From positions 150,527-214,526 of the IMG/VR virus record IMGVR_UViG_3300024308_000188: a stretch of DNA of 64,000 nucleotides. One strand, 5' to 3'. This document shows positions 18,933 through 46,001 of the stretch, in pieces. Under the pieces are notes generated by a model. That model worked only from the letters and a program-made list of their open reading frames with translations, did no database searches and had not been told where the DNA came from. The position numbers and the translations under genes are program-made. Each line of letters begins with the position of its first letter. Within the stretch, counting starts at the first letter, position 1.

Positions 18933-18954
18933 ATTCTTTGGGGAAATAAAAAAT

Positions 18955-19764
18955 ATGTTTAGTTCACCAGAAAATAGTCCTTATGGAGTGTTGCCAGAAC
19001 ATACAATACCTTTGGTTGAAATAGAAGAATCTTTGTGTGAACCTTATATTCATGGTCAAACAGTAAAAGTCAAAAAGCTTCCAAGGTTTCAACCAGTATG
19101 TCACATTATAATTCGCCCACCTGAAGCCAAACAAGTTGTTGTAGAAGAAAGTTTCGAGCAAGATTTTATTCAACAAAAATACACAACTGTAGATCTCAGC
19201 AAACTTTCTCGCTACAAAAGAACAGCCGAACAAAAAGAAGTCATGCAGGAAGTTGACATCGAAGTTGATATTTCTCCACCTGACAATCTGATACGTTTAA
19301 AAACTGCCCATATAAAAAACTTTCCTAAAATACTTCAAACTAAATCAGGTTTGATAAAAGATGTTTTTATAAAAGAATATCTTCCTCAAATTTTAGGTAT
19401 TGATGAAGCTTCTGCTTATGTAGAGGCATTCGCAAAAGACGGACTCGGCTTATCTGAATTTGAGATAAGCGTTGATATGATTCCATATATTCATAACGCG
19501 ATCAAGACTGATTTCGTTAGCCTTATCCTAAAACAATTGACTAACCTAAGTGAAGAAACCCGACAAGCTTATATTATAGGTTATGTAACTGATGCTCTTG
19601 CATCTGCGCGTTATCTAGCTAAAAATAATCTTGCGGCTCAACAGCACAGACGTTACCAAGAAAGACTGGACAATCCTGCCGGATATGTTGCTGGCGTTGG
19701 AATGAAAAAATCTAAGGTAATTCGTGATGGTAAAGCAGATAAAGAAAAAGAAGCCAATAGGTAA
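18955..19764 (+). CDS. Hypothetical protein upstream of terminase (positional candidate for small terminase)
   Basis: ATG 18955 preferred because GTG 18925 lies inside the hairpin; function is positional inference only. Confidence 0.7.
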   Translation: MFSSPENSPYGVLPEHTIPLVEIEESLCEPYIHGQTVKVKKLPRFQPVCHIIIRPPEAKQVVVEESFEQDFIQQKYTTVDLSKLSRYKRTAEQKEVMQEVDIEVDISPPDNLIRLKTAHIKNFPKILQTKSGLIKDVFIKEYLPQILGIDEASAYVEAFAKDGLGLSEFEISVDMIPYIHNAIKTDFVSLILKQLTNLSEETRQAYIIGYVTDALASARYLAKNNLAAQQHRRYQERLDNPAGYVAGVGMKKSKVIRDGKADKEKEANR

Positions 19765-22675
19765 AGCCAAAAAACCTAGTGCAATTAAACCATTAGATGA
19801 TTTATTCAATTTGTTGGGTGAAGATGACGATGAAAGCGTCACAATAGTACATGACGACGATGACGACGATGATGGCCATCATTTTAAGCATGATTTAGAA
19901 GATGGCCATGAAGTCTTAGATCTCGAACAACTTATATATGATGAACTGGATAATGCTAGGCCGATCTCTAAAGATTTGCGTATAGACGACAGTTCTATGC
20001 CGATAGCAAAAAACTTCTTACAGTTTGCTAATGATGAAAGTTTTCTTAGTTCCACGCCTTATCTCGAACAGGCCATAATAGGTATCAAACTTTTTGCTGA
20101 GTATTGTCCAAGACCTGAATGTTCTGATTTAAAATGGTTTTCTGATGATGGACATTCGGCAGATGAACCATTAGCAACACTTTCCAGAAAAGTGTCTCTT
20201 TTACATCATGGTGTTTGTCCAAAGTGTGGCGCACGTAAATCCGAACTTATTGCAAGTGGTGAACTAAATTTCTATAACGAACTTGTAGTTGTTGCTGGAC
20301 AGCGTTGTGTTACTGGCGATACTCATATTTTCACTGGAAAAGGTATTGAAAGAATTGGAGATCTTGTTCCGCGCAATGCTAAACAAGGTTACAATGATTT
20401 TAAATATCCTGTATTCAACGGTGAAAAGCTTGAGACAACAAAAGAATTTTATATAACGAAAGCCGAACACGTTTACACACTACAGCTGGATAATGGATCT
20501 ACTTTAAGTGGAACTCTTGACCATCCTGTTCGTGTTGAAAAGTTTGGTTATCGTGCTTTGCACCAAATAAAAGCTGGTGAGCAAGTTGTTGTACAAACCG
20601 GACAAAATTGTTGGGGAAATTTAAACTGCCCTTATACAGTTGATGAATTACGCTCTATAGGATCTGATATTACAAATCGACTAGACTTGTTGGTTGATAC
20701 AGTAGCTGGTAAAGGCTTACATCCAGATCTTTTAAAATACAGTATGAAAAATTGTCGAGAATTTCTACGTGGAGTATTCGACAACAACACAACGCAATAT
20801 CCTGTTGCTTACCACCAATTAGTAAAAGATGTTTATGCCTTGCTGCTAAACATTGGCATTCTGCCTACAATTCAAAATACCTCAGAAACAATCTCCATTT
20901 CTATCTCAAACGAAAACCGAAATATATTATTTGATGATCACAGATCCGTCAAAAGAAATCGGCATCTTTTATCCGTTGTTAGCTGCGGAGTTACAGATAG
21001 AACTGAAGTCATGTACGATGTTACAATGCCTATCACACAACATTTTATTACCAATGGCATTGATTCACATAACAGCGGCAAGTCTGCGGTTGTTACCATG
21101 ATAAGTGCTTATATAGTGCATTTGTTTTTGATGTGTGGTAAGCCCACTGAACTTTTCAATATTCGTAATAACGAAATATTGCATGGAACTTTCCTTGCGC
21201 TTACACTTGGACAAGCAACACAAAACTTATGGGAACCTTTTCTCGGTTACATAAATAATAGTCCTTGGTTTAAAGCTTATCACTTAATGCTTCGTCGTTA
21301 TGAAAAGAAATACGGAGAAGTTCTACTAAAGCTAAAAGATACCTTTATTGATTATCGTCATAGAAACCTTAAACTTTATCCGGCAACTCCAGACAAACGT
21401 GTACTTCGTGGTCGTACTCGTATACTCGGAGCCCTGGATGAACTTGGGTGGTTTGATTCTAATCGTGATAGTAAAAAAGTTAAGGATAACGCGCACGAAG
21501 TTTATAAAGCAATGTCAAACAGTTTGGCTACTGCCAGACAAAGTGAAAAGCGTTTAGTCGAACAAGGCTTTGATCAATTCATGTTAACCGGATATATGTT
21601 GAACGTAAGTTCTCCAAATAATATCCGTGACAAAATCATGGAACTTTATAAACAAAGTTTGGGCAGTCGTAAGATGCTTGGCCTTCATCGTCCAACATGG
21701 AAAATGAATCCACATATTCCATTTGATGGTGAATTGATACGTGAAGAATATCGTAAAGATCCTATTGGAGCTGCACGAGACTTTGGAGCCGAGCCAAGTT
21801 TATCAAGTAATCCGTTTATGAGTAATCACAGATTACTTGAAGAGACTGTTAGAACTAGCGGTAAAAATTGGGTTAAATATGCGCTCAAAACTATTCGTAT
21901 CAGTCGAGACGAAAAGCACAGAACCGTTGAGTTACTTAACGTCAAACAAAATGGCTCTAGGAGTGTTATGGCTATTGATGCTGGATTCTCTAACAACTGT
22001 TTTGCCATAGTCTGTGGATCTTTGCATGATGGTATTCCTCACATGGATTGCCTTTTAGAAATAAATGCTCTTCCTGGTATTCCAATAAGTTTCACTTCTG
22101 TTTTTGCAGATGCTGTACTTCCACTTATTGAACAGCGCAATTGCAGTATTCTTTTGGCAGACCGTTGGAATAGTATCAAGTTATTGCAAGATGCTCAAGC
22201 CACCTATGATAGTTTAAAAGTGTCAGGTCAATATAGCTTACGCTACAACGATATGTACGAAGTTAAAACAGCTATTGAAATGGGTCAATTCAAAATACCA
22301 AACATTGAAGATCCTAGCATTAAAAATATCCTTGCTAGTAACCTCGATGATTATCCAGCGTGTTTTGAAGGTAGACCTGTACATCATTTGCTGCTGCAAC
22401 TTGCAACCGTTGTTGATGTTGGTAAGAAATCTGTTGAAAAAGGAAATGGATTCACCGATGATCTTTGGAGAGCAGCCGCGCTTTGTTATTTTGGTTTAAC
22501 TAATCCAGATTATCAAGAGCATTTGGTTGGTGAGGTTGAAAGTAAAAAAGTTCAACCACCGTTAGCCCTGTTGAAGAAACTCACGGGCGGAATGAATGCG
22601 CTTACTGTTACAACCGGAAACAAAACGTATTCGGGTTCGACAAAATTCATCGGTGTAAAACGAACAGGAAAATAA
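19724..22675 (+). CDS. terL: Terminase large subunit, intein-containing
   Basis: Walker A GQR|SGKS split by intein; Walker B LGALDE; nuclease AIDAG, LADRW, DDLWRA; portal-like gene downstream. Confidence 0.9.
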   Translation: MMVKQIKKKKPIGKAKKPSAIKPLDDLFNLLGEDDDESVTIVHDDDDDDDGHHFKHDLEDGHEVLDLEQLIYDELDNARPISKDLRIDDSSMPIAKNFLQFANDESFLSSTPYLEQAIIGIKLFAEYCPRPECSDLKWFSDDGHSADEPLATLSRKVSLLHHGVCPKCGARKSELIASGELNFYNELVVVAGQRCVTGDTHIFTGKGIERIGDLVPRNAKQGYNDFKYPVFNGEKLETTKEFYITKAEHVYTLQLDNGSTLSGTLDHPVRVEKFGYRALHQIKAGEQVVVQTGQNCWGNLNCPYTVDELRSIGSDITNRLDLLVDTVAGKGLHPDLLKYSMKNCREFLRGVFDNNTTQYPVAYHQLVKDVYALLLNIGILPTIQNTSETISISISNENRNILFDDHRSVKRNRHLLSVVSCGVTDRTEVMYDVTMPITQHFITNGIDSHNSGKSAVVTMISAYIVHLFLMCGKPTELFNIRNNEILHGTFLALTLGQATQNLWEPFLGYINNSPWFKAYHLMLRRYEKKYGEVLLKLKDTFIDYRHRNLKLYPATPDKRVLRGRTRILGALDELGWFDSNRDSKKVKDNAHEVYKAMSNSLATARQSEKRLVEQGFDQFMLTGYMLNVSSPNNIRDKIMELYKQSLGSRKMLGLHRPTWKMNPHIPFDGELIREEYRKDPIGAARDFGAEPSLSSNPFMSNHRLLEETVRTSGKNWVKYALKTIRISRDEKHRTVELLNVKQNGSRSVMAIDAGFSNNCFAIVCGSLHDGIPHMDCLLEINALPGIPISFTSVFADAVLPLIEQRNCSILLADRWNSIKLLQDAQATYDSLKVSGQYSLRYNDMYEVKTAIEMGQFKIPNIEDPSIKNILASNLDDYPACFEGRPVHHLLLQLATVVDVGKKSVEKGNGFTDDLWRAAALCYFGLTNPDYQEHLVGEVESKKVQPPLALLKKLTGGMNALTVTTGNKTYSGSTKFIGVKRTGK
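20306..21073 (+). mobile_element. Intein (256 aa) with degenerate LAGLIDADG remnant
   Basis: Starts CVTGDTHI, block B TLDHP, ends FITNGIDSHN followed by Ser; remnant EFLRGVFDNN..LVKDVYALLLNIGI. Confidence 0.9.
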
Positions 22676-22717: not shown

Positions 22718-23401
22718 ATGTCAAATCAATATGTCTATAGTGCTAAGCAGCACTCAGACTTTCTGCAAAAACATAATGTACTTAAAGCCGCAAATTTTCT
22801 TGAGTTTGTCTCTGCCCCTCAGTTTTTAGGGCAATCTGTTATTTGGGAAAAGATGTCTACTGCAAGTGTAATGGACTACGCACACAAAATTACATTTTTT
22901 CAAAATAGTGTAATGGGTGATGTTAACTATTATGAAGCATTATTTTTATATGCGATACATACTCAAATAACAACACTCAATTTTCACGAACACAACGCAC
23001 AACCTAAACACCTTTATTTGTGTCGTACTGAACGTGCATATATGTTCAATCGATTCAAAGATATTTTCCGAGATAGTCCTTGGTTCTCAAATTTACTTAA
23101 ATCATTGGCTGAATACAATAGCAATTCTTTTAAAGCCCTAACAATTAAAGACTGTGACATGGAATTCTCTTTGTGTGGGAATTTAGTTATTCGATTTGTT
23201 GGAGCTATTAACACAGATAATGATCTAAGATTGATGCGCGGTAAATTCATTGTAGGTATTCTGAACTTCCAAAGTTCGCTATTTCCTAGTGTGAAATTGC
23301 CTTATGAAAAACCTCGCCTTATCTATGATAAGTTTTTGTCCGAAAATGTAGATCCTGCTGATTTGCCGTATTTGCCATACATAAACGCTTGTTTAGAATA
23401 A
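22718..23401 (+). CDS. Degenerate paralogue of the terminase ATPase N-terminal region (no Walker A)
   Basis: AANFLEFV..FL vs TerL AKNFLQFA..FL; FRDSPWFS vs INNSPWFK; DLRLMRGK vs DKRVLRGR. Confidence 0.6.
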   Translation: MSNQYVYSAKQHSDFLQKHNVLKAANFLEFVSAPQFLGQSVIWEKMSTASVMDYAHKITFFQNSVMGDVNYYEALFLYAIHTQITTLNFHEHNAQPKHLYLCRTERAYMFNRFKDIFRDSPWFSNLLKSLAEYNSNSFKALTIKDCDMEFSLCGNLVIRFVGAINTDNDLRLMRGKFIVGILNFQSSLFPSVKLPYEKPRLIYDKFLSENVDPADLPYLPYINACLE

Positions 23402-28584: not shown

Positions 28585-29549
28585 ATAAAATCAAACCTAA
28601 TCCGGTTATAGATATTATTGACGGCCACAACTGGCTTAATCGAGCATATTACTCCAGTTTAAAGAACAAGGGAATGACGTTAAAGGACGGAACACCTACC
28701 GGAGCAGCTAAAACTTTTTGCGTTATGCTAAATGCTCTTATTCGCAGAAGATTAGCGTCACGAGGTCAAGTTATTTTAGCTGTTGTATTTGACCACAAAA
28801 AAGGTTCGGACAAGCGCAAGAAAATAATGCGCGATTTCATGGAAAAGCGTTTACGCGGAGAAGATGCTGCTAAATTTCCAGAAAAATATTTAAGTGGTTA
28901 TAAAGGTAATCGTTTTTCTGACGGTGACGATGCTAAAAGTATTGCACTTCGCCCACAATTAAAAATGATTATTGATATTTTGACTGCGCGTGGAATTCAC
29001 CCTATAACTTCTGTTCACGGTGAGGCCGACGATATTATAGGAAGCTTGTGTTTCCAACTAAAATGTCGTAAATATATTTGGAGTCGTGACGGTGATTTCG
29101 CTCAGTTATTAAAACCTGATACAAGGTTACGTTTACCAAAACAAGACAACAGTGAAGAACAAGATATTACATATCAAAGTTGTCTTGAAAAGTATGGCGT
29201 TATTCCTCCAATGTTTGTGGATCTTTTGGCACTGACAGGAGATCAGAGCGATAACATTCCAGGCATTCCAGGCGTCGGAGATAAAACAGCTATCGAATTG
29301 TTGATGCAGTATGAAGATCTTGATTCTATATTCCAAGCAGAACATAAAGGCGCTTTGGGAAAAAAACTCAAAGATCCATTTTATCAAGATCTTTGTTTTA
29401 TGTGCAGAGATTTAGTTGAGATCAAGAAAGACTTAAAGGTAGATACACGATTATCGACCTATCTGTTGGAACCTTGGTCTAAAAAAGTCGAACGAAAAGT
29501 TCGTTCTGTAGAAAAACAGTTTGAGTTCAAAGAAACATTCAACTGTTAG
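28581..29549 (+). CDS. 5'-3' exonuclease / flap endonuclease (PolA N-terminal-like)
   Basis: IIDGHN, VVFD, YKGNR, EADDIIG, SRDGDFAQL, LTGDQSDNIPGIPGVGDKTA. Confidence 0.93.
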   Translation: MNKIKPNPVIDIIDGHNWLNRAYYSSLKNKGMTLKDGTPTGAAKTFCVMLNALIRRRLASRGQVILAVVFDHKKGSDKRKKIMRDFMEKRLRGEDAAKFPEKYLSGYKGNRFSDGDDAKSIALRPQLKMIIDILTARGIHPITSVHGEADDIIGSLCFQLKCRKYIWSRDGDFAQLLKPDTRLRLPKQDNSEEQDITYQSCLEKYGVIPPMFVDLLALTGDQSDNIPGIPGVGDKTAIELLMQYEDLDSIFQAEHKGALGKKLKDPFYQDLCFMCRDLVEIKKDLKVDTRLSTYLLEPWSKKVERKVRSVEKQFEFKETFNC

Positions 29550-29563
29550 CGAGGGGAAATATT

Positions 29564-30238
29564 ATGACAACATTAGAACAAAGACTTCAACAGCTGGTTA
29601 AAGGTGGCTTGGGCTGCAAAACAAATTCAGTTAACTATATGATAACCGATCATTTCTTGGACGCTATAGTACACAGCGTAAGAAATAATTTTTCTGATTT
29701 GGTTGTTGCCTCAAATACGTCCCATGTTCCTAAAGGTCTTGTGGGTTCTTTGCATAAGTTTATACCTGAACTTATTAAAGCAGAAGCTGCTTGCAAATTC
29801 ACCGGACGTACTGCACTAGGAAAGCATTTTAAATATTCTTGCTATCCGGCTTCAGAGTTACCTAACATAGTTGACCAGAGAAATGCCGGACGCAAACTCG
29901 ATATTACTACAATATTCGTGCAAAATACTTTTGGACACAAAGTTCCAGATAATAAAGTTCACCACGTTGATCTGGATTCTGTAGAATCTGGCTTTAATCA
30001 ATTGTTGGAAGATTTTGATAAACCGACCAACATCGGACTTTATTTTTTCGGTAACGATTCTTCTTATGGTACACCTTGGGAAGAAATAGAAGATGCTTTA
30101 AATCGGTCTTTTGATGGTACTCGCCACAACTTAACAGTTTTCCTTCCTGCATCTGTTGTTCGAGATCATAATTTTTTCAAAAGACTGAGTTTGACTTCAG
30201 TTCCTAAGTATTACAGCAAAGTCAAAAACAAAAACTAA
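29564..30238 (+). CDS. Macrodomain-like protein, apparently degenerate
   Basis: Pattern VASN..KGLVGSL..FIPE..ALGK..IFVQNTFG..VDLDSVE..F..FFG..PWEEIEDAL..LTVF follows phage macrodomain layout; Gly-rich loops altered. Confidence 0.5.
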   Translation: MTTLEQRLQQLVKGGLGCKTNSVNYMITDHFLDAIVHSVRNNFSDLVVASNTSHVPKGLVGSLHKFIPELIKAEAACKFTGRTALGKHFKYSCYPASELPNIVDQRNAGRKLDITTIFVQNTFGHKVPDNKVHHVDLDSVESGFNQLLEDFDKPTNIGLYFFGNDSSYGTPWEEIEDALNRSFDGTRHNLTVFLPASVVRDHNFFKRLSLTSVPKYYSKVKNKN

Positions 30239-30290
30239 AAAGTTTGGGGGCTTAGGCTCCCAACCTGTTAGTTCTGATAACAGGTGAATC

Positions 30291-31124
30291 ATGATCACTC
30301 AATTTTCAGCTAATGAAGCTGTTCGTTGTTTTATAAGTCAAGAGTCCTCAGACTTGTCTTTGTTAGAAGATAATTCGGAGGCTTTAGAGAGACTCACAAC
30401 AAAATACAATCGTACTTATATCTTCAAGGTAACTAAAGATCGTATTGATTGCTTTAGTACAAGCATGACACGAGTTATGAATGCCGTGCTTTATCATGGA
30501 TATGATATTCCTTGCTATTTGGTTCCTGCTTCCTCAAATTCTTTAACTGACAGGCTGGCTAGACTTATCGAGCATAGTGAATTAATAAATACATTGAGAA
30601 GCAATTTTACAGAAAGCTTTGTTACCGTTACAAAAATAGAAGATACTTGGTATTTCAAATATGGCCATAAAGATTCTATTTCTGATAAAGCGTTAACATC
30701 TTTTGGATTTCCAATTTGTTCAAAGTTAAATCGCTTAATTGATTCTCAGCTTGATGTGTCGGGCATAGGTAAAATTTTTCTGATAAAAGATCAGACTCTT
30801 ATGTTGAACGTACAGTCTTTGCTTGAAATGAAATATTCATTTGATTTAATTGAAAGCAGAGCCGAAAACAAATCCACCTCTGACGAAATGGATATTTGGC
30901 GTTTGACATCTTGGATGAATGAATATGCTCTTTTCATATACAGAACTTACGACCTTGATATTTGCACTAGCTTGAGCGGTAAATATTTTGGATTAAATCA
31001 CGACAGAGTTTGCATTAAGTCTATTGACGGGCATTTACGCATTGTAAGTAATTCAAGCCCAAGACATCACGACTTGCATTATCTTCATATTTTAAATCAA
31101 GTAGAAGCCATAATGGAGGCTTAG
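30291..31124 (+). CDS. Hypothetical protein
   Basis: 277-aa ORF; CAGGTG SD. Confidence 0.75.
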   Translation: MITQFSANEAVRCFISQESSDLSLLEDNSEALERLTTKYNRTYIFKVTKDRIDCFSTSMTRVMNAVLYHGYDIPCYLVPASSNSLTDRLARLIEHSELINTLRSNFTESFVTVTKIEDTWYFKYGHKDSISDKALTSFGFPICSKLNRLIDSQLDVSGIGKIFLIKDQTLMLNVQSLLEMKYSFDLIESRAENKSTSDEMDIWRLTSWMNEYALFIYRTYDLDICTSLSGKYFGLNHDRVCIKSIDGHLRIVSNSSPRHHDLHYLHILNQVEAIMEA

Positions 31125-31126
31125 TT

Positions 31127-31582
31127 TTGCAGATACAACCTTATTCAAGTACAACTTGGTGGCGTGATATTTTAAATCAATCGCTGCCTTCCCATCTTTT
31201 GCTTGTCGATGTTCAGTTGACAGAGTTTCCTGTAAGTACATCCAAGCATTGGGGTAAGCTTGAGTTGATTCAAGATCCTGAAGATCAAGAGTCGCAGAGT
31301 TACAATGAGTATCTTCAATCTTTTATAGATGAAGGAAATATTTTTAATTATGGTGCAGAACGTCTTGAAGATTGCACTTTGTTTATGACAGTAGCTACTG
31401 TGATAATGGAAAAACAAGACGGCGAATTATTTGCTCAAATTGAAATTCCTCTTGTTATTGATCAGACTACAGTAAGTCCTGATGTAGTTGGTATAAGAAA
31501 AACTGTTCTTACCACTGTCAAAACGCAGTTAGATGAATTGTTATCTGATATTCCAGAATTTATTCCTCACAGGCTAAACTAA
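31127..31582 (+). CDS. Hypothetical acidic protein
   Basis: TTG start after GGAGG; 151 aa. Confidence 0.7.
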   Translation: MQIQPYSSTTWWRDILNQSLPSHLLLVDVQLTEFPVSTSKHWGKLELIQDPEDQESQSYNEYLQSFIDEGNIFNYGAERLEDCTLFMTVATVIMEKQDGELFAQIEIPLVIDQTTVSPDVVGIRKTVLTTVKTQLDELLSDIPEFIPHRLN

Positions 31583-31583
31583 G

Positions 31584-32264
31584 ATGAAAGCAAAACAACT
31601 ATTAGCTGAGTACGGAAAGTGTTACAGCATTGTTCACCGCACAGCAAACTCAAAATTCAATACAACGATGGGTGTTGTTTGTGAGTGCGAAAAACGACTT
31701 GAATCTATTACAAATGAATTGATTAAGTTACCTGAAAAATCTCAGTACGCAAGTCCTTATGTTCGTATTCGTTATGGAAATCGGTTATGCACTATTGATG
31801 AACTTGCTTCTGCTTTTGATTGTTCACCAGTTTATATAGCTGCATATTATGGAATTTATGGTGCTGATATTAAAGGTATGTTACGCGATCTTGGTCGTGA
31901 CTACATTGAATACCACGGCCACCACTATGATCTTTTAGAGATAGGGAATAGAATAAATGTTCCTTGGTCGCTAATGAAAGACATTGAAGATCCAGAAGTT
32001 TTGTACAAGCTGCATGATCACTATCTGAGAATTTTATTCATAGATAAAAATGTTTCTCACGGCAAACCAAATAAAGAACCTTCTGAGAAAATTAAAAAGG
32101 AATACGATATTATACTGAAGAAAATTCTTCAGGCATTTAATACACTTCCTAAGCTTGAAAGTTACTTGGCGGATAAAGCAAAATGTAATTCTGCCGCGCA
32201 AGCACGTAGCGTTAAACGTAGGGCAAAACCTGCCGATATTTTTGATAACATTGATAGAGGATAA
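31584..32264 (+). CDS. Hypothetical protein with two repeated small DNA-binding-like modules
   Basis: IRYGNRLCTIDELASAFDCS / IEYHGHHYDLLEIGNRINVP. Confidence 0.65.
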   Translation: MKAKQLLAEYGKCYSIVHRTANSKFNTTMGVVCECEKRLESITNELIKLPEKSQYASPYVRIRYGNRLCTIDELASAFDCSPVYIAAYYGIYGADIKGMLRDLGRDYIEYHGHHYDLLEIGNRINVPWSLMKDIEDPEVLYKLHDHYLRILFIDKNVSHGKPNKEPSEKIKKEYDIILKKILQAFNTLPKLESYLADKAKCNSAAQARSVKRRAKPADIFDNIDRG

Positions 32265-34223: not shown

Positions 34224-34745
34224 ATGAAAATTTTGGTATCTTTAAATAAAAATAAACCTAAGTCTTTTCCTCAGAAAAGTGCTCAAGTAATTTGCGGCTT
34301 TCCTGGAATTGGTAAAACTCATTTCTTCAATCGCCAGCAAGAGTTGGGATTTACTGTTATGGACAGCGATAGTTCAAAATTCCCTAAAGATGATTTTCCG
34401 GCAAATTACATTAAACACATTGAAGAAGCTCGTTACCAGTGCGATTATTTACTCGTTAGTTCGCATGATGCTGTACGCCAAGCTTTGGTAGATGCTGGAA
34501 TTGAATTCACTTTGATTTATCCAGAAAAGAATTTAAAAGTAGAGTACATGCAGCGTTATGCTAAGCGTGGATCTCCAAAAGAATTCTTAACCATGATGAA
34601 CAAGAACTGGGCAAATTTTTTAACCAGTTGTGTTGATCAACAAGGTTGCACTCATGTTGTGTTAAAAGCAAAACAATTTATGTCGGATGTGATTGGCACA
34701 CAGGAGAAAGTTGATGAATTTACAACAGATGAAAGTCAGGGTTAG
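34224..34745 (+). CDS. P-loop nucleotide-kinase-like protein
   Basis: VICGFPGIGKT, DSDSSKF, lid RY.KRG. Confidence 0.75.
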   Translation: MKILVSLNKNKPKSFPQKSAQVICGFPGIGKTHFFNRQQELGFTVMDSDSSKFPKDDFPANYIKHIEEARYQCDYLLVSSHDAVRQALVDAGIEFTLIYPEKNLKVEYMQRYAKRGSPKEFLTMMNKNWANFLTSCVDQQGCTHVVLKAKQFMSDVIGTQEKVDEFTTDESQG

Positions 34746-35586
34746 AAACTGGCTTACTAATTGTTTTGGTGTTGAACACACAAATGACAAAAGTGAACGC
34801 AGTTTTCGTTTTGCAGAAGAATGTGTAGAATTGTGTCAGGCTATAGGTTTATCGCGTGACCAAATGAATAGTATTTTAGATCACGTTTATAGCCGACCAA
34901 AAGGTGAAGTAGATCAGGAAGCAGCAGGTACACTGATCACATTATTATCAGTGTGTGATTTGCATAGCGTTTCACTTGAATCAATTTTTAAAAGTGAAAT
35001 GAATCGCGCTGAAAATAATATTGAGGCTATTCGTGCTAAGCATAATACAAAACCTGCACATTTGGCCAAACATATTTCTTATTCACAAAATCAAGAAATT
35101 TTAAATCGATCAAAGATAAAGCACGTTACTAAGAAATTGTGTGATTTCTTTAACGCACCTATTTCCTTTGCTTTTCACATGGGAACCGCATCTTCGGAAT
35201 ATTTCGCAATAAGTGTTAAATCTATTTCAGCAGTTATTCAGGCAGATCCTACATTGCTGGACATAAGGGTATATAAAGAGTGGCGCGAAAAACAACCAAA
35301 ACTGTTTTTCTTGGATTCTTATACCACTATAGAAAGAATCACCGGCATCTTTGAAGGCATTAAACTTGATAAGAAACAGACTAAATTTTGGGTAACTCGC
35401 ATTGCACCAAACTCAAAAGATTTGAATAATATAGTAGAGCTTACGGAAGCTCTGGACTTGGACTCAATTGGTTTTTGCTTACAAGGAATTGCATTTCCAA
35501 AGGTTGTTCAGTGTGAGTTCGGTAGCCCTGTTCCATCAGACAATGAATACTTATTTATATTCAATAAACAAATATTGAATGACTGA
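34714..35586 (+). CDS. MazG-like nucleotide pyrophosphohydrolase fused to an unknown C-terminal domain
   Basis: ATG 34714 after AGGAG; ERSFRFAEECVEL...QEAAGTLITL (EExxE...E pattern). Confidence 0.65.
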   Translation: MNLQQMKVRVRNWLTNCFGVEHTNDKSERSFRFAEECVELCQAIGLSRDQMNSILDHVYSRPKGEVDQEAAGTLITLLSVCDLHSVSLESIFKSEMNRAENNIEAIRAKHNTKPAHLAKHISYSQNQEILNRSKIKHVTKKLCDFFNAPISFAFHMGTASSEYFAISVKSISAVIQADPTLLDIRVYKEWREKQPKLFFLDSYTTIERITGIFEGIKLDKKQTKFWVTRIAPNSKDLNNIVELTEALDLDSIGFCLQGIAFPKVVQCEFGSPVPSDNEYLFIFNKQILND

Positions 35587-35595
35587 GGGTAAATT

Positions 35596-36429
35596 ATGCA
35601 ATCTTTTTTCCAATTTTGTACAAAATACCATGATGGAATGTGGCCTGATTTAATTTTGATCGGAAGTCAGATATTCGGTCAAGTTAAGCCTGATGAATTC
35701 TTAAAAAGAGACGGTATAAACATTCCGAAACCTTGCACTTATTTAGATGTTGGTAACTTGCAGTTAGATGCTAGTTACTACAGGGAACAGGCTTTGACAT
35801 CTAGCCTTCTTATAGGTCAAAGATCCGGTAAATCTTATTTGTTAAGAGCTTTAGTGAGCTATATATCTAGCTTCTCAGAAGAATTTAATTTAGGTCAGAA
35901 TTCTACACAGTCAAAAGATTATTTTCATATTGATGTGCCGAATGCAAATGTTGAAGATCATGTAAGAAGTATATGTGAAACTTTAACAGCCTTTAAAGCA
36001 GCCTTTACTGTGGAAATGTTTGAATCAGGAAATCAGACAGCTGCACGAATTCTAATGAATTCTGGATTCACCGTGGTTTTGTGTGATGGTATTCCAAATT
36101 CAGGAAACGCTGATTATTTTGAACTTGGAAGATGTATTGGTTATATATCTGAAGAGTTAGCTTGGAGATATAAAGCAGTAAAAAATAAATCAATGAATCC
36201 AATTGACCGACTTAATTCTTTAAAGATGTCGAGCATTGCACATAATGCACCTCTCTTTATTTCGATAAGTTCGGTTTTCGATGATGATACCTTTTTAAAA
36301 TGTCGCGTTAATTTATTCATACGTCGCGCTACTTGGGAAGTCAACCCAAATATAAAAGGATCTTTACTTGGAGAGTTATTCATCGCAGATCCTACAGGAG
36401 CCATGCGTGATTTTGGATCACGAGTTTAA
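35596..36429 (+). CDS. Stand-alone paralogue of the terminase ATPase domain (intein-free, no nuclease domain)
   Basis: GQRSGKS identical to spliced TerL Walker A; RATWEVNPNI vs RPTWKMNPHI; DPTGAMRDFGS vs DPIGAARDFGA. Confidence 0.8.
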   Translation: MQSFFQFCTKYHDGMWPDLILIGSQIFGQVKPDEFLKRDGINIPKPCTYLDVGNLQLDASYYREQALTSSLLIGQRSGKSYLLRALVSYISSFSEEFNLGQNSTQSKDYFHIDVPNANVEDHVRSICETLTAFKAAFTVEMFESGNQTAARILMNSGFTVVLCDGIPNSGNADYFELGRCIGYISEELAWRYKAVKNKSMNPIDRLNSLKMSSIAHNAPLFISISSVFDDDTFLKCRVNLFIRRATWEVNPNIKGSLLGELFIADPTGAMRDFGSRV

Positions 36430-36441
36430 ATTTACTTGTTG

Positions 36442-36477
36442 AAAAAAGAAAAGGGAACCGTAATGGCTCCCCTTTCT
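36442..36477 (-). terminator. Terminator at the convergence of the two transcription arms
   Basis: Minus strand GAAAGGGGAGCC...GGTTCCCTTTTC followed by T-rich tail. Confidence 0.7.
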
Positions 36478-36941
36478 CATATTGCTACGACTAATGCAAG
36501 TGCAGTAATTATTTTCAGTGTTATGCTTTCAATACTATTCCGCAATTGTTCTTCCCTTCTGCTTTCCCTTTCATCATTCAAAACAACTTCCATTTTCAAT
36601 GCTCTGTATTCTTCCAGCTCAGCAAGTTCACGTATTAAGTTTGCGCGTTGGACAGTTAATTCTAAAATTAAATTGGCCTGTTCCACAAGTGCTGCATTAG
36701 ATTCAGCACTGATATAAGCTTGCTCTACTTTTACTAAGTCGTCAGGATCTACAAGTGCCCATGTTTTTCCATTTGCATCTTTATAACTTCCTACATCATG
36801 CGTGAAGGCTTCTGGAATACTCACAGGAGTTACTTCTTTGTGTACGAATTCTGCAATCTTTTTGGTCTGTATTTCTCTCGGCTCTGGCGCACTAGCACAT
36901 CCAAAAAGAAACATTGATAAAACAATTAGAGCGTATTTCAT
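36477..36941 (-). CDS. Lipoprotein with coiled coil and C-terminal hydrophobic segment (spanin-like)
   Basis: MKYALIVLSMFLFG-C lipobox; ATGA coupling at 36938-36941; C-term ITLKIITALALVVAI. Confidence 0.75.
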   Translation of the reverse strand: MKYALIVLSMFLFGCASAPEPREIQTKKIAEFVHKEVTPVSIPEAFTHDVGSYKDANGKTWALVDPDDLVKVEQAYISAESNAALVEQANLILELTVQRANLIRELAELEEYRALKMEVVLNDERESRREEQLRNSIESITLKIITALALVVAI

Positions 36942-42215: not shown

Positions 42216-42677
42216 TTATATCAAAGTTGAGGTTAATGTAGATTCATTCATCAGATTGTACTGCACAAATGCAGTAGCATTAAAATCTAAATCAGGATCT
42301 TGAGGCAATAACACACTAACTGTATGCAGAGAATTCTGTACAAATACTTGTCCAAAATTTGATTTAACCTCCACTACAGTGTATGGTATTTGCAATTCAT
42401 TTATTGAACTACTTAGCAAGTATGAACTTGCTTGTGGAACTAAAGGTCGTTCAACTGTAGTCGCTACTTGATCGAAAAATACTTCTGGCATGTTCAGGTA
42501 AGTTAGACTCAAGAAACTTAAAAAGCTTTGACCTATATTGTACTGACCTCTTTGTGCCAATGAAGGATTTCCGTCTGACAAAAAAACTTGATCGCCATCA
42601 ATCGTGACCGTTTCAGGAAACAATGTATCTGGATCAAATCTGTTTGCGTAGTATGCCGCGACATATACACTAGGCAT
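42216..42677 (-). CDS. Hypothetical (probable virion) protein
   Basis: AGGAG SD; within structural array. Confidence 0.7.
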   Translation of the reverse strand: MPSVYVAAYYANRFDPDTLFPETVTIDGDQVFLSDGNPSLAQRGQYNIGQSFLSFLSLTYLNMPEVFFDQVATTVERPLVPQASSYLLSSSINELQIPYTVVEVKSNFGQVFVQNSLHTVSVLLPQDPDLDFNATAFVQYNLMNESTLTSTLI

Positions 42678-42732
42678 CAGATGTCTCCTATTAAATGCAG
42701 AACATACTGCGTTTCATTTTCCCAGTTTTATT

Positions 42733-43062
42733 TTATTCTTCTGTCATTACAGTTTCGCATATTCTGTGAGACTGTGTAGTAGGTTGAGTATCCACAACAG
42801 ATCCTCTTGAAAATCTGGCTCGGATTGCAGAAGCTTCTGGTTCCGCCACTATAACACCATTTAAACGAAGTGGCAAAATGACGGCACCTGTTGCATCGTT
42901 AGTGACCCAATAGTATCCGTCAAAAAACCATTCGTTTTGTCTAGGATTTACCGATGTATAAAAGTTTACGTAACGTCTTGGTGAATTTAGACTATAGTAG
43001 CATGTGGTCACTGGAACTAACGTGGCTTCTTTTGAGTGACTGTGTACGTATATATTTGCCAT
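42733..43062 (-). CDS. Hypothetical protein
   Basis: 109 aa; aromatic/beta-rich. Confidence 0.65.
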   Translation of the reverse strand: MANIYVHSHSKEATLVPVTTCYYSLNSPRRYVNFYTSVNPRQNEWFFDGYYWVTNDATGAVILPLRLNGVIVAEPEASAIRARFSRGSVVDTQPTTQSHRICETVMTEE

Positions 43063-43071
43063 TACATTGCC

Positions 43072-43734
43072 TTAATTCGTTGAATATGTTTTAATGCACA
43101 CCGCATGTATAGCAGCACCTGTTCCTGAGATATAAGTTCCCAAAGAAGTCAGATTTAAAATATAGTTACGAAGCTCTACATTAGTTGAAGGTAAACCCGC
43201 TACTGAAAATTCACTTAAATATCCAGAAGCTCCAGGAGTATCTGTCCTACTTCTCCATCTGTACGTTATATTATCTACTTGGATATTGAACAAGGTTGTT
43301 CCGTTTAAGTAAGGTTCTGGTTGGTAGTTTTCGTATTTTACTGCTTGGTGCGTAGTTTGAACATACGAGCAGTAAATGCTTTCTGTATAATCATCATACT
43401 CAACTCTTTCAAATAAAGTGTAGTAAATGGGATTGTTATTTATATTCCTATTCGGCCCTATAAAGTATTTAGATTGTAACAAGGCAAAAGTCTGCGCTTG
43501 ATCCGCAACTACTACACCATTTAATCTAACAGATCCATATTGAGTTCCGTCTGGATTGTATGCCCATTCGTAACCACCAACAAAACCAAATCTTACATTC
43601 GGTGTTCCTGACTGCGGGTACGACATAAAATAACGTAACTCACCGTTATTTACTAAGTTATTAAAAGAAGGCTTGAATAAAATAACTGGTGTAGACTCTA
43701 CGCGATTTGTATTATGTAAATAAGTATTTCCCAT
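43072..43734 (-). CDS. Hypothetical protein, Tyr/Asn-rich
   Basis: 220 aa within structural array. Confidence 0.7.
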   Translation of the reverse strand: MGNTYLHNTNRVESTPVILFKPSFNNLVNNGELRYFMSYPQSGTPNVRFGFVGGYEWAYNPDGTQYGSVRLNGVVVADQAQTFALLQSKYFIGPNRNINNNPIYYTLFERVEYDDYTESIYCSYVQTTHQAVKYENYQPEPYLNGTTLFNIQVDNITYRWRSRTDTPGASGYLSEFSVAGLPSTNVELRNYILNLTSLGTYISGTGAAIHAVCIKTYSTN

Positions 43735-43738
43735 AATC

Positions 43739-44266
43739 CTAACCTAACAAGTTTTGAATTGTAAACTTGAAGTCGTTTATTTTGTAACGCTGTCCAGTTA
43801 CTATTGGGCCATTGTGTTCAAATTCAGCACCTGAACCTACGTTACCTACTGAACACAACATTAACATTCTGCAAATATTTCCTGCTGTGTAAGCAGCTGC
43901 ACCACCATGCAGAGAAATCATTGCAAGTGTTGGCGATCCATTAGCTAATCCAGTCATTTCTTCTGTGCGTTGTGTGAACATCCAAATGCGTTCATGTACA
44001 CTTCCACCTATTTTCTTTTGAGTAAAAGTAGGTAAAAACAGTTGACCAAGTTCAGTACGTGTTGAAATTAAATTTGTTCTGGCTAAACTGTGACTAATCA
44101 AACCTGTCGCAGCTGCTGTAACAGTAGCACTGTTTATATAATCTTCTTCAGGTTGAGTTAGTGGGCCACCAGTAAACAAACTAACTGAAACAGCCGTAGT
44201 ATTTGCAAGATCGTTTCTGTGCAAAGCGTATGTACTTGCTAATAAAGCACCAGTATTCATTTTCAT
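43739..44266 (-). CDS. Paralogous virion protein, short form
   Basis: LFTGGPLT..LCSVGNVGSGAEF..YKINDF. Confidence 0.75.
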   Translation of the reverse strand: MKMNTGALLASTYALHRNDLANTTAVSVSLFTGGPLTQPEEDYINSATVTAAATGLISHSLARTNLISTRTELGQLFLPTFTQKKIGGSVHERIWMFTQRTEEMTGLANGSPTLAMISLHGGAAAYTAGNICRMLMLCSVGNVGSGAEFEHNGPIVTGQRYKINDFKFTIQNLLG

Positions 44267-44281
44267 TGTGTGACGCCTCTA

Positions 44282-44848
44282 TTACCAGCCCATTTCAAGA
44301 CTTGGGAAATTAAATTGGAAATTAATGTCAGTAGCTTTAACCTTACTTTGCATAGTAATGGATGTTGATTCAATTTTTACATCAGCACTGCTTGCATTAT
44401 TTCCTACTGAACCGTTGAAAATAATTCGACTCGCATTTGCCGCCGCTGAAGTCCAACCTGTCCAACTTGAACCTACAATTGCGAGAGTGAAAGATCCAGC
44501 TGTACCTGCTGACAGTACAGTCATTAAGCTATCGATTTTGGATAAAGCAAATTTCTTGCGTAGACCAGTAGTTCCGCTATTGTCAGATCTTTGTGAAAAA
44601 GCCGGAACATATAATCGAGCTAATTCAACTCTTCCATTTGGCCCCATTAAAGTAGCTGGCCAATTTCCTGCAATAATTCCATTTGCGTCTGTGAATGTGT
44701 CCCTAATGACATTCATTTCAGTCTGAGAAAGTTCTGATCCACTCCACAAACTAAATACTATGCCTGTTCCCAAAGTTAAATTGGAATTTGCGTAGCGTTC
44801 TCCAAATAAAAGTAGCATTTGATCTGCAAAAGATTTATTAATTTTCAT
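44282..44848 (-). CDS. Paralogous virion protein, short form
   Basis: LWSGSELS..AGTAGSF..NGSVGNNASSADV..VKATDI. Confidence 0.75.
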   Translation of the reverse strand: MKINKSFADQMLLLFGERYANSNLTLGTGIVFSLWSGSELSQTEMNVIRDTFTDANGIIAGNWPATLMGPNGRVELARLYVPAFSQRSDNSGTTGLRKKFALSKIDSLMTVLSAGTAGSFTLAIVGSSWTGWTSAAANASRIIFNGSVGNNASSADVKIESTSITMQSKVKATDINFQFNFPSLEMGW

Positions 44849-45993
44849 GCGTCCACTTCCAAAAGTTTTTGACCATCAACAAAGAAGTTGCTTGGTATGA
44901 AATACTGACTTTGATTATTTATCTTAAGTTCAGCCGCTGATTCTGGAGTACCTACATTACACATGAGGACGGGAACTGTTTTTCCTTGCACACCAAGTAG
45001 TAGGTTACTTTCTACGTTTGGAATAACAACGGCTTTTGTCCACTCCGGTCTGGCTGTGTTTGCGTATGTCGCATTTGCACTCGGATCTTTTAATCCGGCA
45101 GTAAACTGTCTTATATAGAATGAGGACTGTCCTGAAGTTGTGGAGGTAGCATGTGAAATACACGCAACACCTTTTATCATTCGCTTTGTAAAATTAAAGC
45201 GATAAGTAGTGTTCACGTTTATTGAAGTACCTGCCGCTATTCCTATACTCACTAAAGCATTATTTTCATCTACAATATAAAGTGCGCCAATTTGCTGGTT
45301 ATTAAATGCACCAGTATCAGAGCGAATTATATGTAGTAAAAGAAAATCAGCTTCAACAGTTTCCTCAAATAAAAAACAACTAAAATCCCTTCTGCGTAAA
45401 GTACCGTCACCACCAGCTCTACGTCCAAAATCTACAGCAAAGTAAAGTGGGCCACCTAAAGTTTTGGCTGCTATACTATTTAAGTGCCAAGCACCGCCGT
45501 CAGATGCACCACCCAAAGCATAATACTGATCTTCCGTTGTCAGTGCTGGAACAGCTTGAGAAGGTGCGGCATTTGAGCTGCCTCCATTTCTATTTACATA
45601 AGTTCTTGCTGTAAATAAAACACAATTCCCTATGTTTTGGTTTGCGGCTGCTTGCCAATCATAGACCTGATCAGTTATGTTTACTGGCTTAAACCAACAA
45701 CCATCCCGTTCTTTGTACGTAGCATAATTTCCGTTTGAAAGTTGTAAACTTACTTTTCCACTTGCACGGACAACATTCAACTGAGCTGTGGTCATGCCAT
45801 CTGCTGCTAGTGCAACTGAACTTACCCAATTGTTATCTCTTGATTCAATTCCTGTGTTAAGATCTTCTATATTTTCTGCCGTAGACTCTCTGAATAAAAA
45901 TACTTGACAGTTATAACTTATATTTCCAGACGGAGTTATGTAATCAAAATCTAAAGATCTTAGTGCTGTGTCCATCAAACCAGTAGAGCGCAT
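44845..45993 (-). CDS. Paralogous virion protein, long form
   Basis: ATG 45993 after AGGAG; EADFLL, FTAGLKD, CNVGTPESAAEL. Confidence 0.75.
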   Translation of the reverse strand: MRSTGLMDTALRSLDFDYITPSGNISYNCQVFLFRESTAENIEDLNTGIESRDNNWVSSVALAADGMTTAQLNVVRASGKVSLQLSNGNYATYKERDGCWFKPVNITDQVYDWQAAANQNIGNCVLFTARTYVNRNGGSSNAAPSQAVPALTTEDQYYALGGASDGGAWHLNSIAAKTLGGPLYFAVDFGRRAGGDGTLRRRDFSCFLFEETVEADFLLLHIIRSDTGAFNNQQIGALYIVDENNALVSIGIAAGTSINVNTTYRFNFTKRMIKGVACISHATSTTSGQSSFYIRQFTAGLKDPSANATYANTARPEWTKAVVIPNVESNLLLGVQGKTVPVLMCNVGTPESAAELKINNQSQYFIPSNFFVDGQKLLEVDA

Positions 45994-46001
45994 AGCAACT
46001 C

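What the first reader, a model, noticed from the sequence alone, without database searches (positions are those of the whole stretch)
35596..36429. Second, stand-alone terminase-ATPase paralogue among accessory genes: candidate decoy against terminase-sensing defence
Seen: intact GQRSGKS at 35815-35835 (the intein-free form of the TerL site), LIGSQIFGQ/IIGIKLFAE, ISISS/LNVSS, RATWEVNPNI/RPTWKMNPHI and DPTGAMRDFGS/DPIGAARDFGA. The protein stops where the TerL ATPase ends, with no nuclease domain. It lies 13 kb from terL, after a kinase and a MazG-like gene. Established: Avs1-3 (AVAST, NLR-like STAND) sensors detect large terminase, including ATPase features. Inference: with 22718-23401 this is a three-member terminase family in which truncated copies may titrate sensors, inhibit a competing phage's packaging motor or tune the phage's own motor. 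I do not recall such a system being described.
Basis: partly seen in the sequence, partly recalled or inferred. Interest (0 to 1): 0.8.

Follow-up and report, generated by a model that had tools for sequence, protein, structure and literature searches.

The report
Stand-alone copy of terminase ATPase domain
An uncultured jumbo phage carries, 13 kb from its real DNA-packaging enzyme, a small intact gene that is a very diverged copy of that enzyme's ATP-binding half. The same kind of gene (T4 vs.8) has already been described, and it switches the Avs2 immune sensor on rather than blocking it, so the find is real but only moderately new and its function is still open.

Summary
Window 35596-36429 (+) is an intact 277-aa gene. 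[quoted passage not shown] It stops at the ATPase/nuclease linker.

It keeps the P-loop (GQRSGKS), the catalytic Glu, the coupling Ser and the lid motif (TWxxNP...DPxxAxRDFG). It has lost the 4-Cys zinc ribbon, the TerL-invariant LRGRTR motif (arginine-finger position), the alpha-3 motif and the nuclease.

Only one other family member was found among about 15 billion proteins: P0002, 262 aa, 35% identical, full length, with Walker A GKN. Two closer relatives of the phage lack the gene. So it is a rare, fast-evolving accessory gene kept by selection, not a fresh pseudogene and not a recent duplicate of terL.

The "third member" (22718-23401) is only borderline (6.6 bits, E 0.024).

The decoy idea is untested and weakened. 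Published work shows that isolated TerL ATPase domains and T4 vs.8, a stand-alone TerL-ATPase-like protein, activate Avs2. ORF277 is not a sequence relative of vs.8.

Best reading: an ATP-binding, non-motor terminase mimic whose partner is unknown.

The parts
35596..36429 (+). ORF277: stand-alone, diverged paralogue of the TerL ATPase domain (ASCE plus lid), 277 aa
   Evidence: ORF listing and sequence. hhalign against TerL: probability 96.6%, E 5e-10, over residues 3-276. TerL HMM 31.5 bits against a shuffle maximum of 2.9. Identical protein on 8 contigs. Homologue P0002 at 35% identity.
35585..35589 (+). Shine-Dalgarno GAGGG, 6 nt before the ATG, overlapping the TGA stop of the upstream gene (34714-35586)
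   Evidence: Read directly from the sequence.
35596..35694 (+). N-terminal conserved block (aa 1-33), matching the TerL N-terminal helices (NFxxFC...PYLEQAxIGxxLFAE)
   Evidence: 18 of 28 residues identical between ORF277 and P0002. Aligned to TerL profile positions 103 onwards.
35815..35835 (+). Walker A / P-loop GQRSGKS, including the P-loop arginine
   Evidence: Coordinates. G, Q, R and K are invariant in all 27 aligned sequences. P0002 has GQRSGKN.
36118..36135 (+). FELGRC: the degenerate counterpart of the TerL-invariant LRGRTR motif, which sits just before the Walker B strand at the position of the P74-26 trans-arginine finger
   Evidence: Alignment A4 and the conservation table. Finger position taken from PMC5727402 and the secondary structure of the TerL model. 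The mapping is inferred, not superposed.
36136..36156 (+). Walker B strand IGYISEE. The Asp is replaced by Glu and the catalytic Glu187 is kept.
   Evidence: E187 is invariant in all 27 sequences. TerL has D at 186, ORF277 has E and P0002 has D.
36259..36273 (+). ISISS: counterpart of the TerL coupling motif N[IV]SSP at the end of beta-4
   Evidence: S226 is invariant in all 27 sequences.
36322..36423 (+). C-terminal lid block RRATWEVNPNI...DPTGAMRDFGSR, the best-conserved part of the protein
   Evidence: BLASTP against the phage's own TerL: 45% identity, E 5e-8. phrog_17415 TerL, E 0.007. 27 of 47 residues identical to P0002. T, W, N, P, D, A, R, D and G are kept in both family members.
36447..36477 (.). 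Hairpin between the convergent genes; a likely bidirectional terminator that ends the rightward gene block
   Evidence: RNA fold -12.2 kcal/mol, z -2.3. A-run before it and T-rich sequence after it.
19724..22675 (+). The bona fide large terminase (983 aa) with a 256-aa intein (nt 20306-21073) inserted inside Walker A. This is the parent family of ORF277.
   Evidence: phrog_17415, E 1.8e-282. Intein_splicing match. Junctions GQR|C...HN|SGKS. The model of the 86%-identical intein-free TerL P0004 has pLDDT 80.6 and hits HK97, Sf6, T4, D6E and P74-26 TerL.
22718..23401 (+). Kinship with TerL is borderline, so it is listed for completeness only.
   Evidence: TerL HMM 6.6-6.8 bits (E 0.024 among 232 frames; 0 of 500 shuffles reach it). 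hhalign probability 6.6%, falling to 1.9%. Against ORF277: probability 0.06%.

Best explanation
ORF277 is a functional accessory gene. It encodes a stand-alone, anciently diverged paralogue of the ATPase domain (ASCE core plus lid) of this phage family's large terminase.

Shown:
- Homology runs over the whole ATPase domain.
- The protein is cut off exactly at the ATPase/nuclease linker.
- It keeps the P-loop with its arginine, the catalytic glutamate, the coupling serine and the lid motif.
- It has lost the zinc ribbon, the Arg-rich LRGRTR motif, the alpha-3 motif and the nuclease.
- It is rare and sporadically distributed, and it lies in a variable accessory block.

Inferred: it can still bind nucleotide and undergo the P-loop/lid switch. 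It cannot act as a packaging motor, because it has no donor arginine motif, no nuclease and no C-terminal arm. One family member has GKN in Walker A, so ATP turnover is probably not required for the family's role. It therefore most likely works as a non-translocating terminase mimic: it occupies a surface that normally recognises the ATP-bound TerL ATPase domain.

Which partner it binds is not decided by the evidence. My split is roughly equal between (a) the TerL ring of this phage or of a co-infecting phage, where a finger-less subunit would cap or poison the motor, and (b) host sensors of terminase, as a trigger, sponge or decoy. It is the same kind of gene as T4 vs.8, arisen independently.
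For: Homology and extent:
- E 5e-8 against the phage's own TerL.
- probability 96.6%, E 5e-10, residues 3-276 aligned to TerL 103-435.
- 31.5 bits; second-best frame in the window.
- the reciprocal HMM finds only TerL, E 1.4e-4.

Domain boundary: the alignment ends at the low-pLDDT linker 424-427 of the confident TerL model. That model matches solved terminases.

Kept and lost residues: of 80 TerL columns that are at least 96% conserved, 16 are kept in both family members. All 16 lie in the P-loop, the catalytic Glu, the C-motif or the lid. The 4 Cys, GTFxALTxxQA, LRGRTR and SLxTxR are lost in both.

Selection: P0002 is 35% identical, full length, colinear and without stops. Conservation is concentrated in the N-terminal block (18/28), the P-loop block (15/35) and the lid (27/47), against 17-25% elsewhere.

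Not a recent copy of terL:
- 24 of 60 nt are identical at the P-loop, and every codon differs.
- GC3 is 0.248, like the rest of the genome.
- In the tree the family sits on a stem of 4 substitutions per site. The AU test rejects grouping it with the phage's own TerL clade (p 0.004 and 0.002).

Accessory status:
- The gene is absent from the 261-kb relative L025.
- It is absent from the closest relative, with 86% TerL identity.
- It sits in a different gene order in L007.
- An alternative sequence follows the upstream gene in one wastewater contig.

Precedent: PMC13601566 describes vs.8, and vs.8 is present in 1011 phage records.

Arginine-finger positions and the cis role of the P-loop arginine with the lid come from PMC5727402.
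Against: - No usable structure. The AF2 model of ORF277 has pLDDT 54.7, and its Foldseek hits are meaningless. The fold is therefore inferred from sequence only.
- The mapping of LRGRTR to the P74-26 R139 position rests on secondary-structure order, not on a superposition.
- ORF277 and P0002 share an Arg (R205, in the pair 'DR') in the shortened alpha-3 segment, and ORF277 has R179. A trans-finger is therefore not strictly excluded.
- There is no evidence of expression. The 'RNA?' runs are contigs that may hold DNA, and they do not cover the gene body.
- No binding partner was or could be tested.
- With only two family members, the conservation statistics are thin.
Confidence: 0.5

Rival explanations
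1. One reading: ORF277 is an immune decoy. It binds terminase-sensing STAND sensors (Avs1-3) without activating them and so shields the real TerL.
For: ORF277 keeps exactly the features that Avs sensors are reported to read on TerL, namely the ATP site and its active-site residues (PMC13601566). It is an accessory, fast-evolving gene in a variable block. The authors of PMC13601566 themselves raise the possibility that vs.8 and Ksap-type proteins are anti-defence proteins.
Against: Isolated TerL ATPase domains of five phages and the stand-alone paralogue vs.8 activate EcAvs2, and Ksap2 activates KpAvs2 (PMC13601566, PMC11564622). By analogy a binder is more likely to trigger than to block. There is no PADLOC or anti-defence family hit, no information on timing, and the host and its defences are unknown. 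The family is extremely rare, with 2 members, which is odd for a counter to so widespread a sensor.
Confidence: 0.12
2. ORF277 is a neofunctionalised P-loop NTPase. It kept the terminase fold but now does an unrelated job, such as a nucleotide-dependent switch or regulator, and terminase mimicry plays no part.
For: The P-loop, catalytic Glu and lid are kept, while everything specific to the motor is lost. The ESM Atlas look-alikes are generic P-loop NTPases such as AAA_22/TniB, ABC and AFG1. The neighbours are nucleotide-metabolism-like accessory genes.
Against: The most conserved parts are the TerL-specific lid motif and N-terminal helices, not only the generic P-loop. P0002 has GKN in Walker A, which argues against a role that depends on catalysis.
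Confidence: 0.2
3. ORF277 is an evolutionary relic: a leftover half of a second terL gene that is drifting without function.
For: It is very divergent (20-24% identity to TerLs). It has lost many invariant TerL residues. It is dispensable in close relatives. It is the least conserved of the 8 genes shared with L007.
Against: The frame is intact in two lineages that are 35% identical, with blockwise conservation of 57-64% in the lid and N-terminus. It has a good Shine-Dalgarno, tight operon packing and a terminator. Its codon composition is ameliorated. The protein is identical on 8 contigs from several samples.
Confidence: 0.1
4. ORF277 is a true second motor subunit: an auxiliary packaging ATPase that forms part of this phage's terminase holoenzyme.
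For: It is homologous to the TerL ATPase and has an intact P-loop and catalytic Glu.
Against: It is not syntenic with terL and portal. It is absent from phages whose TerL is 86% and 67% identical. The Arg-rich motif and the alpha-3 motif are lost. P0002 has GKN.
Confidence: 0.05

Closest known systems
T4 vs.8 (NP_049732, 219 aa), a stand-alone ATPase-like protein of T4-like phages (PMC13601566)
   Same: Both are small stand-alone proteins related to the ATPase domain of the phage's own TerL. Both have a TerL-type P-loop that carries the P-loop arginine (GGRQSGKS in vs.8, GQRSGKS here). Neither has a nuclease domain. Both are encoded far from terL among accessory genes, are restricted to one phage lineage, and have no known function (PMC13601566).
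   Different: There is no detectable sequence kinship beyond the P-loop: hhalign probability 0.5% against the ORF277 family and 15% against this TerL family. Each therefore appears to derive from its own TerL lineage. vs.8 is common (1011 phage records), whereas the ORF277 family has 2 members. vs.8 is reported to activate EcAvs2 on co-expression; nothing of that kind is known for ORF277.
Large terminase (TerL) of Y3/Yoloswag/JA11-like jumbo phages and their uncultured relatives (phrog_17415; PF27249-bearing proteins)
   Same: The ATPase domain is homologous from the N-terminal helices to the lid. The shared elements are the GQRSGKS P-loop, the catalytic Glu, the coupling Ser, and TWxxNP and DPxxAxRDFG.
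   Different: ORF277 lacks the first 80-100 or so residues, the 4-Cys zinc ribbon, the LRGRTR and SLxTxR motifs, the nuclease domain and the C-terminal tail. It has no intein, is not next to the portal gene, and is not conserved among relatives.
Ksap2 of Bas60-like phages, the small trigger of KpAvs2 (PMC11564622, PMC13601566)
   Same: It is a lineage-restricted small phage protein of unknown function that resembles a TerL ATPase core.
Arginine-finger mutants of TerL (P74-26 R139A, D6E R158 mutants) (PMC5727402)
   Same: These are subunits that can still bind ATP but cannot donate the trans-acting arginine. That is the state ORF277 appears to be in naturally at the LRGRTR position.
   Different: They are laboratory mutants of full TerL or its ATPase domain. 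Whether ORF277 enters a TerL ring at all is unknown.

Membership tests
Large terminase (TerL) | N-terminal ASCE ATPase domain with Walker A, Walker B/catalytic Glu and a lid | tested here: met
   hhalign probability 96.6% over the whole domain. The P-loop, E187, S226 and the lid motif are conserved.
Large terminase (TerL) | C-terminal RNase H-like nuclease domain | tested here: not met
   The protein ends at the inter-domain linker. TerL's nuclease begins around D484 in P0004 numbering.
Large terminase (TerL) | [quoted passage not shown] | tested here: not met
   LRGRTR reads FELGRC in ORF277 and FGLKYC in P0002. The alpha-3 SLxTxR motif is deleted. Positions are taken from PMC5727402. Caveat: R179 and R205 are present, and the mapping was not made by superposition.
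Large terminase (TerL) | Core gene, conserved in relatives and adjacent to the portal gene | tested here: not met
   The gene lies 12.9 kb from terL. It is absent from L025 and from the relative with 86% TerL identity.
vs.8-type stand-alone TerL-ATPase-like proteins | Stand-alone protein of about 200-280 aa, homologous to a TerL ATPase domain with Walker A and B | tested here: met
   vs.8 is described in PMC13601566.
vs.8-type stand-alone TerL-ATPase-like proteins | Sequence membership in the vs.8 family | tested here: not met
   hhalign of vs.8 against the ORF277 family gives probability 0.5%, with only the P-loop aligned. tblastn of ORF277 against 50,697 phage records gives no hit.
vs.8-type stand-alone TerL-ATPase-like proteins | Activates Avs2 on co-expression | not testable with these tools
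   This needs a co-expression toxicity assay.
   No multimer prediction or assay was available. The published analogues are activators (PMC13601566, PMC11564622).
   The runs labelled RNA are contigs that may hold DNA, and they do not cover the gene body. The promoter scan is at background level.
Pseudogene or relic | Disrupted frame, or neutral decay between lineages | tested here: not met
   The ORFs are intact and colinear at 35% identity, with blockwise conservation.
Three-member terminase paralogue family including ORF227 (22718-23401) | Significant homology of ORF227 to TerL or to ORF277 | tested here: inconclusive
   6.6-6.8 bits, E 0.024, with 0 of 500 shuffles reaching it, from two short colinear matches. 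However, hhalign probability is 6.6% and falls to 1.9% with its relative added. Its relative L028_164 scores at shuffle level. Against ORF277 the probability is 0.06%.

The most novel reading that the evidence does not exclude
ORF277 is a naturally 'finger-less' terminase ATPase module that the phage deploys as a weapon or a shield. It would either cap or poison the packaging ring of co-infecting relatives and satellites, or sponge terminase-sensing immune receptors (Avs1-3, Upx) without letting them oligomerise. If so, TerL-ATPase paralogues (vs.8, Ksap-like proteins, ORF277) would form a recurrent, independently evolved class of mimicry proteins.
Probability: 0.12. Interest if true: 0.75.

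Novelty: new variant of a known kind. Interest (0 to 1): 0.4.

Why it matters
Terminase is one of the main molecular patterns that bacterial immune sensors (Avs1-3, Upx) use to detect phages. Stand-alone terminase-ATPase look-alikes (T4 vs.8, Ksap1/2) have just been recognised, and their function is openly unknown.

ORF277 is an independent second origin of such a protein, in an unrelated jumbo-phage lineage. It shows an informative pattern: the ATP site and lid are kept, while the arginine motifs, zinc ribbon and nuclease are lost.

If these proteins turn out to be mimics that modulate immunity or packaging, convergent cases like this one would show which features matter. If they do not, ORF277 is simply a rare accessory NTPase.

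Either way, the question can be tested directly with assays that already exist.

Tried and rejected
- Pfam, NCBIfam and PADLOC scans of ORF277 and P0002 gave no hits. PHROGs gave only a weak TerL hit.
- tblastn and megablast against 50,697 phage records gave nothing.
- Searches for more family members returned only P0001 and P0002. These were the k-mer/HMMER search of 5.8 billion clusters (single sequence and profile), full HMMER on 1.84 billion representatives, IMG/VR, JGI metagenome contigs and GTDB genomes. The further IMG/VR hits were ordinary TerL genes that matched the lid motif.
- dN/dS was not possible. All 6 fetched copies differ by at most 1 synonymous base, and the only distant homologue is saturated.
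- The AF2 model of ORF277, built with a 27-row alignment, has pLDDT 54.7. Its Foldseek PDB hits are meaningless and were discarded.
- Profile searches of PDB sequences with the TerL alignments gave no true hits. Residue-level mapping onto P74-26 or D6E could therefore not be done. I used the secondary-structure order of the confident TerL model instead.
- Expression could not be assessed. The only 'RNA' runs are wastewater contigs that may contain DNA and leave the gene body uncovered.
- I first misread the 750 unlaid nt of one contig as lying inside ORF277. They lie beyond the end of the laid stretch. This is corrected in the notebook.
- The 30-nt alternative sequence seen after the upstream gene in one contig was not found in the window or in IMG/VR.
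- A recent duplication of terL, or an intein homing-site copy, is rejected. Only 24 of 60 nt are identical at the P-loop, and the AU test gives p 0.002-0.004.
- Chance similarity is rejected.
- vs.8 family membership is rejected.
Full report
**What is at the coordinates**

Window 35596-36429 (+) is an intact 277-codon ORF. It starts with ATG, and a GAGGG Shine-Dalgarno lies 6 nt upstream, overlapping the stop of the preceding gene. It is the last gene of a rightward block. A hairpin at 36447-36477 (-12.2 kcal/mol, z -2.3) separates it from a convergent leftward block that begins with a lipoprotein gene and a DUF1353 gene.

**The genome**

The window belongs to an uncultured jumbo phage. Its contigs are 214-319 kb and come from subsurface metagenomes; close strains occur in wastewater. 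No sequenced phage matches it at the DNA level.

The true large terminase is at 19724-22675: 983 aa, phrog_17415, E 1.8e-282. It is followed by the portal gene at 23741-25675. TerL is about 40% identical to those of Erwinia Y3/Yoloswag and Dickeya JA11-type jumbo phages.

A 256-aa intein (aa 195-450) is inserted inside Walker A, which reads ...AGQR|C...HN|SGKS.... The same insertion site is used in many relatives, and other relatives are intein-free. An AF2 model of the 86%-identical intein-free TerL P0004 is confident (pLDDT 80.6). It matches the solved terminases of HK97, Sf6, T4, D6E and P74-26, and the Avs3-bound PhiV-1 TerL.

**Is ORF277 a terminase ATPase paralogue? Yes.**

- BLASTP against the phage's own TerL gives 45% identity over 44 aa, E 5e-8.
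- A profile of ORF277 and its one homologue, compared with 25 intein-free TerLs, gives hhalign probability 96.6%, E 5e-10. Residues 3-276 align with TerL profile positions 103-435 of 731.
- A TerL HMM scores ORF277 at 31.5 bits and P0002 at 32.4 bits. The maxima in 500 shuffles are 2.9 and 4.3.
- Among all 232 open frames of the window, ORF277 is second only to TerL, E 6.8e-10. The reciprocal ORF277-family HMM finds only TerL, E 1.4e-4.
- The alignment starts where the folded part of TerL starts and stops at the low-confidence inter-domain linker, P0004 residues 424-427.

So the protein is the ATPase domain and nothing else.

**What was kept and what was lost**

Eighty TerL columns are at least 96% conserved. 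ORF277 keeps 25 of them, P0002 keeps 20, and both keep 16. Those 16 are the P-loop G-Q-R..K, Y195, the catalytic Glu, the coupling-motif Ser, T-W..N-P and D...A.RD.G of the lid.

Lost in both:
- the four Cys of a zinc ribbon that this TerL family carries ahead of Walker A;
- the beta-2 motif GTFxALTxxQA;
- the invariant LRGRTR just before the Walker B strand;
- the alpha-3 motif SLxTxR, which is deleted;
- RDKIxEL.

[quoted passage not shown] In the TerL model these are the LRGRTR and alpha-3 sites. The family therefore seems to have lost the arginines it would donate to a neighbour, while keeping the site that binds ATP and the P-loop arginine that couples in cis to the lid. This mapping is by secondary-structure order only. 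ORF277 R179 and the shared R205 remain as caveats.

Two further details bear on catalysis. ORF277 has Glu in place of the Walker B Asp. P0002 has GKN instead of GKS in Walker A. From general knowledge of P-loop NTPases, replacing the Mg-coordinating Ser/Thr cripples catalysis. So the shared function probably does not need ATP turnover.

**Is it a live gene?**

Only one other family member exists in the searched collections: P0002, 262 aa, 35% identical, aligned over its full length, on a 5.4-kb contig of a related phage. Nothing was found in IMG/VR, JGI contigs or GTDB genomes beyond the same phage.

Two intact colinear frames at this divergence argue for purifying selection and against a recent pseudogene. 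So does the pattern of identity, which is concentrated in the N-terminal helices (18/28), the P-loop block (15/35) and the lid (27/47), against 17-25% elsewhere. Classical dN/dS could not be computed, because the six fetched copies differ by at most one synonymous base.

**Origin**

ORF277 is not a fresh duplicate of terL.
- Only 24 of 60 nt around the P-loop match, and every codon differs.
- Composition is genome-like, GC3 0.248.
- In a maximum-likelihood tree the ORF277/P0002 pair (support 100/100) sits on a stem of about 4 substitutions per site and attaches in a deep polytomy.
- AU tests reject grouping it with the phage's own TerL clade (p 0.004) or with the phage's own TerL plus P0004 (p 0.002). 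The usual long-branch caveat applies.

**Distribution and context**

- The 261-kb relative L025 (TerL 67% identical) has the upstream MazG-like gene abutting the convergent lipoprotein gene, with no ORF277.
- The closest relative (TerL 86% identical) shows the same gene-size pattern with a 40-bp gap. No DNA was available, so this rests on gene sizes and the DUF1353 hit.
- In L007 the homologue sits elsewhere in the block. It is the least conserved of eight shared genes: 34% identity against 36-71%.
- In wastewater contigs with 96-99% identical flanks, one contig runs from the upstream gene into 35 nt of unlike sequence at position 35592. Two contigs of another run break exactly at the two borders of ORF277. 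A third run has the first 117 nt of ORF277.
- Between the two long-contig strains, ORF277 differs at 1 of 834 nt, while the flanks differ at 12-22 per 500 nt. The divergence is mosaic, so this is not decisive.

Together these results mark ORF277 as a swappable accessory cassette. They say nothing about transcription.

**The proposed third member**

ORF227 (22718-23401) lies right after terL. It has one relative, a 164-aa gene in the same place in the closest relative phage (BLASTP E 2e-6). It is missing from another relative.

Its similarity to TerL is borderline. It scores 6.6-6.8 bits, E 0.024 among 232 frames, from two short colinear matches: the N-terminal helix and the SPWF...Y helix. None of 500 shuffles reaches that score. 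Against this:
- hhalign probability is 6.6% and drops to 1.9% when the relative is added;
- the relative itself scores at shuffle level;
- there is no similarity to ORF277.

I leave this as inconclusive.

**Function**

The tools cannot test binding. The anatomy points to a nucleotide-binding, non-motor mimic of the TerL ATPase domain.

Two partners are plausible. The first is the TerL ring, where a subunit with an acceptor site but no donor arginine would cap or poison the motor. The second is host sensors that read the ATP-bound ATPase domain.

The literature bears directly on the second. EcAvs2 is strongly activated by the isolated ATPase domains of five terminases. T4 vs.8, an uncharacterised stand-alone protein homologous to the gp17 ATPase with Walker A and B, is toxic with EcAvs2. 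The authors leave the function of vs.8, Ksap1 and Ksap2 open and mention anti-defence as one possibility (PMC13601566). Ksap2 activates KpAvs2 (PMC11564622).

vs.8 (L034:9257-9913, 219 aa) occurs in 1011 phage records. It shares only the P-loop with ORF277 (probability 0.5%). ORF277 is therefore an independent origin of the same kind of gene, not a member of that family.

**Verdict**

The identity of the gene is well supported. The three-member family is unproven. The decoy role is untested and made less likely by analogy. Novelty is moderate: a new, very rare variant of a recently recognised kind of phage protein whose function is still open.

Noticed in passing
window 20306-21073 (within terL, 19724-22675): A 256-aa intein splits the TerL Walker A (GQR|C...HN|SGKS). 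Only the splicing domain is recognised; no LAGLIDADG domain was found. Many relatives carry larger inteins with LAGLIDADG at the same site, and others are intein-free.
   Followed up: partly
TerL family, P0004 residues 116-156 (window TerL aa ~128-170): This jumbo-phage TerL family carries an invariant 4-Cys zinc-ribbon-like insert just ahead of Walker A. The insert is absent from ORF277 and P0002.
   Followed up: partly
window 22718-23401 and L028:12872-13366: A small gene family sits in the slot between terL and portal. It has faint colinear matches to two TerL helices but no P-loop. It is present in two relatives and absent in a third.
   Followed up: yes
window 23458-23694: A 78-aa ORF with CPKC...CAPCC (zinc-ribbon-like) lies between ORF227 and portal. 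Genes of 76-77 aa sit at the same place in relatives (L028:13434-13664, L029:12229-12462). Their homology to this ORF was not checked.
   Followed up: no
window 18925-19764: A 279-aa gene overlaps the start of terL and is conserved in relatives (266-277 aa). It has no family hit. By position it is a possible small-terminase candidate.
   Followed up: no
L028:1-3292: In the closest relative, the topoisomerase IV/gyrase A-like gene carries an intein with a LAGLIDADG domain. Inteins are therefore widespread in this phage group.
   Followed up: no
window 35592 onward in run X5: A wastewater contig with a 99%-identical upstream gene continues with 35 nt of unlike sequence (beginning TTATGCAACATAATC...) in place of ORF277. 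This sequence was not found in the window or in IMG/VR.
   Followed up: partly
window 34224-34745 and 34714-35586: The 173-aa P-loop protein (GFPGIGKT; weak AAA_33 hit; phrog_4182) overlaps the 290-aa gene by about 30 nt. The N-terminal 120 aa of the 290-aa gene match phrog_8593 and phrog_14118. The 'kinase' and 'MazG-like' labels are plausible but not confirmed by any curated family.
   Followed up: partly
L001 vs L002 (window ~29100-31600 and 35596-36600): The two long-contig strains are 97.9% identical overall, but the divergence is mosaic. Blocks with no differences alternate with blocks of 4-10% divergence, and a segment downstream (window ~42600-46100) is replaced. This suggests frequent recombination between strains.
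   Followed up: partly
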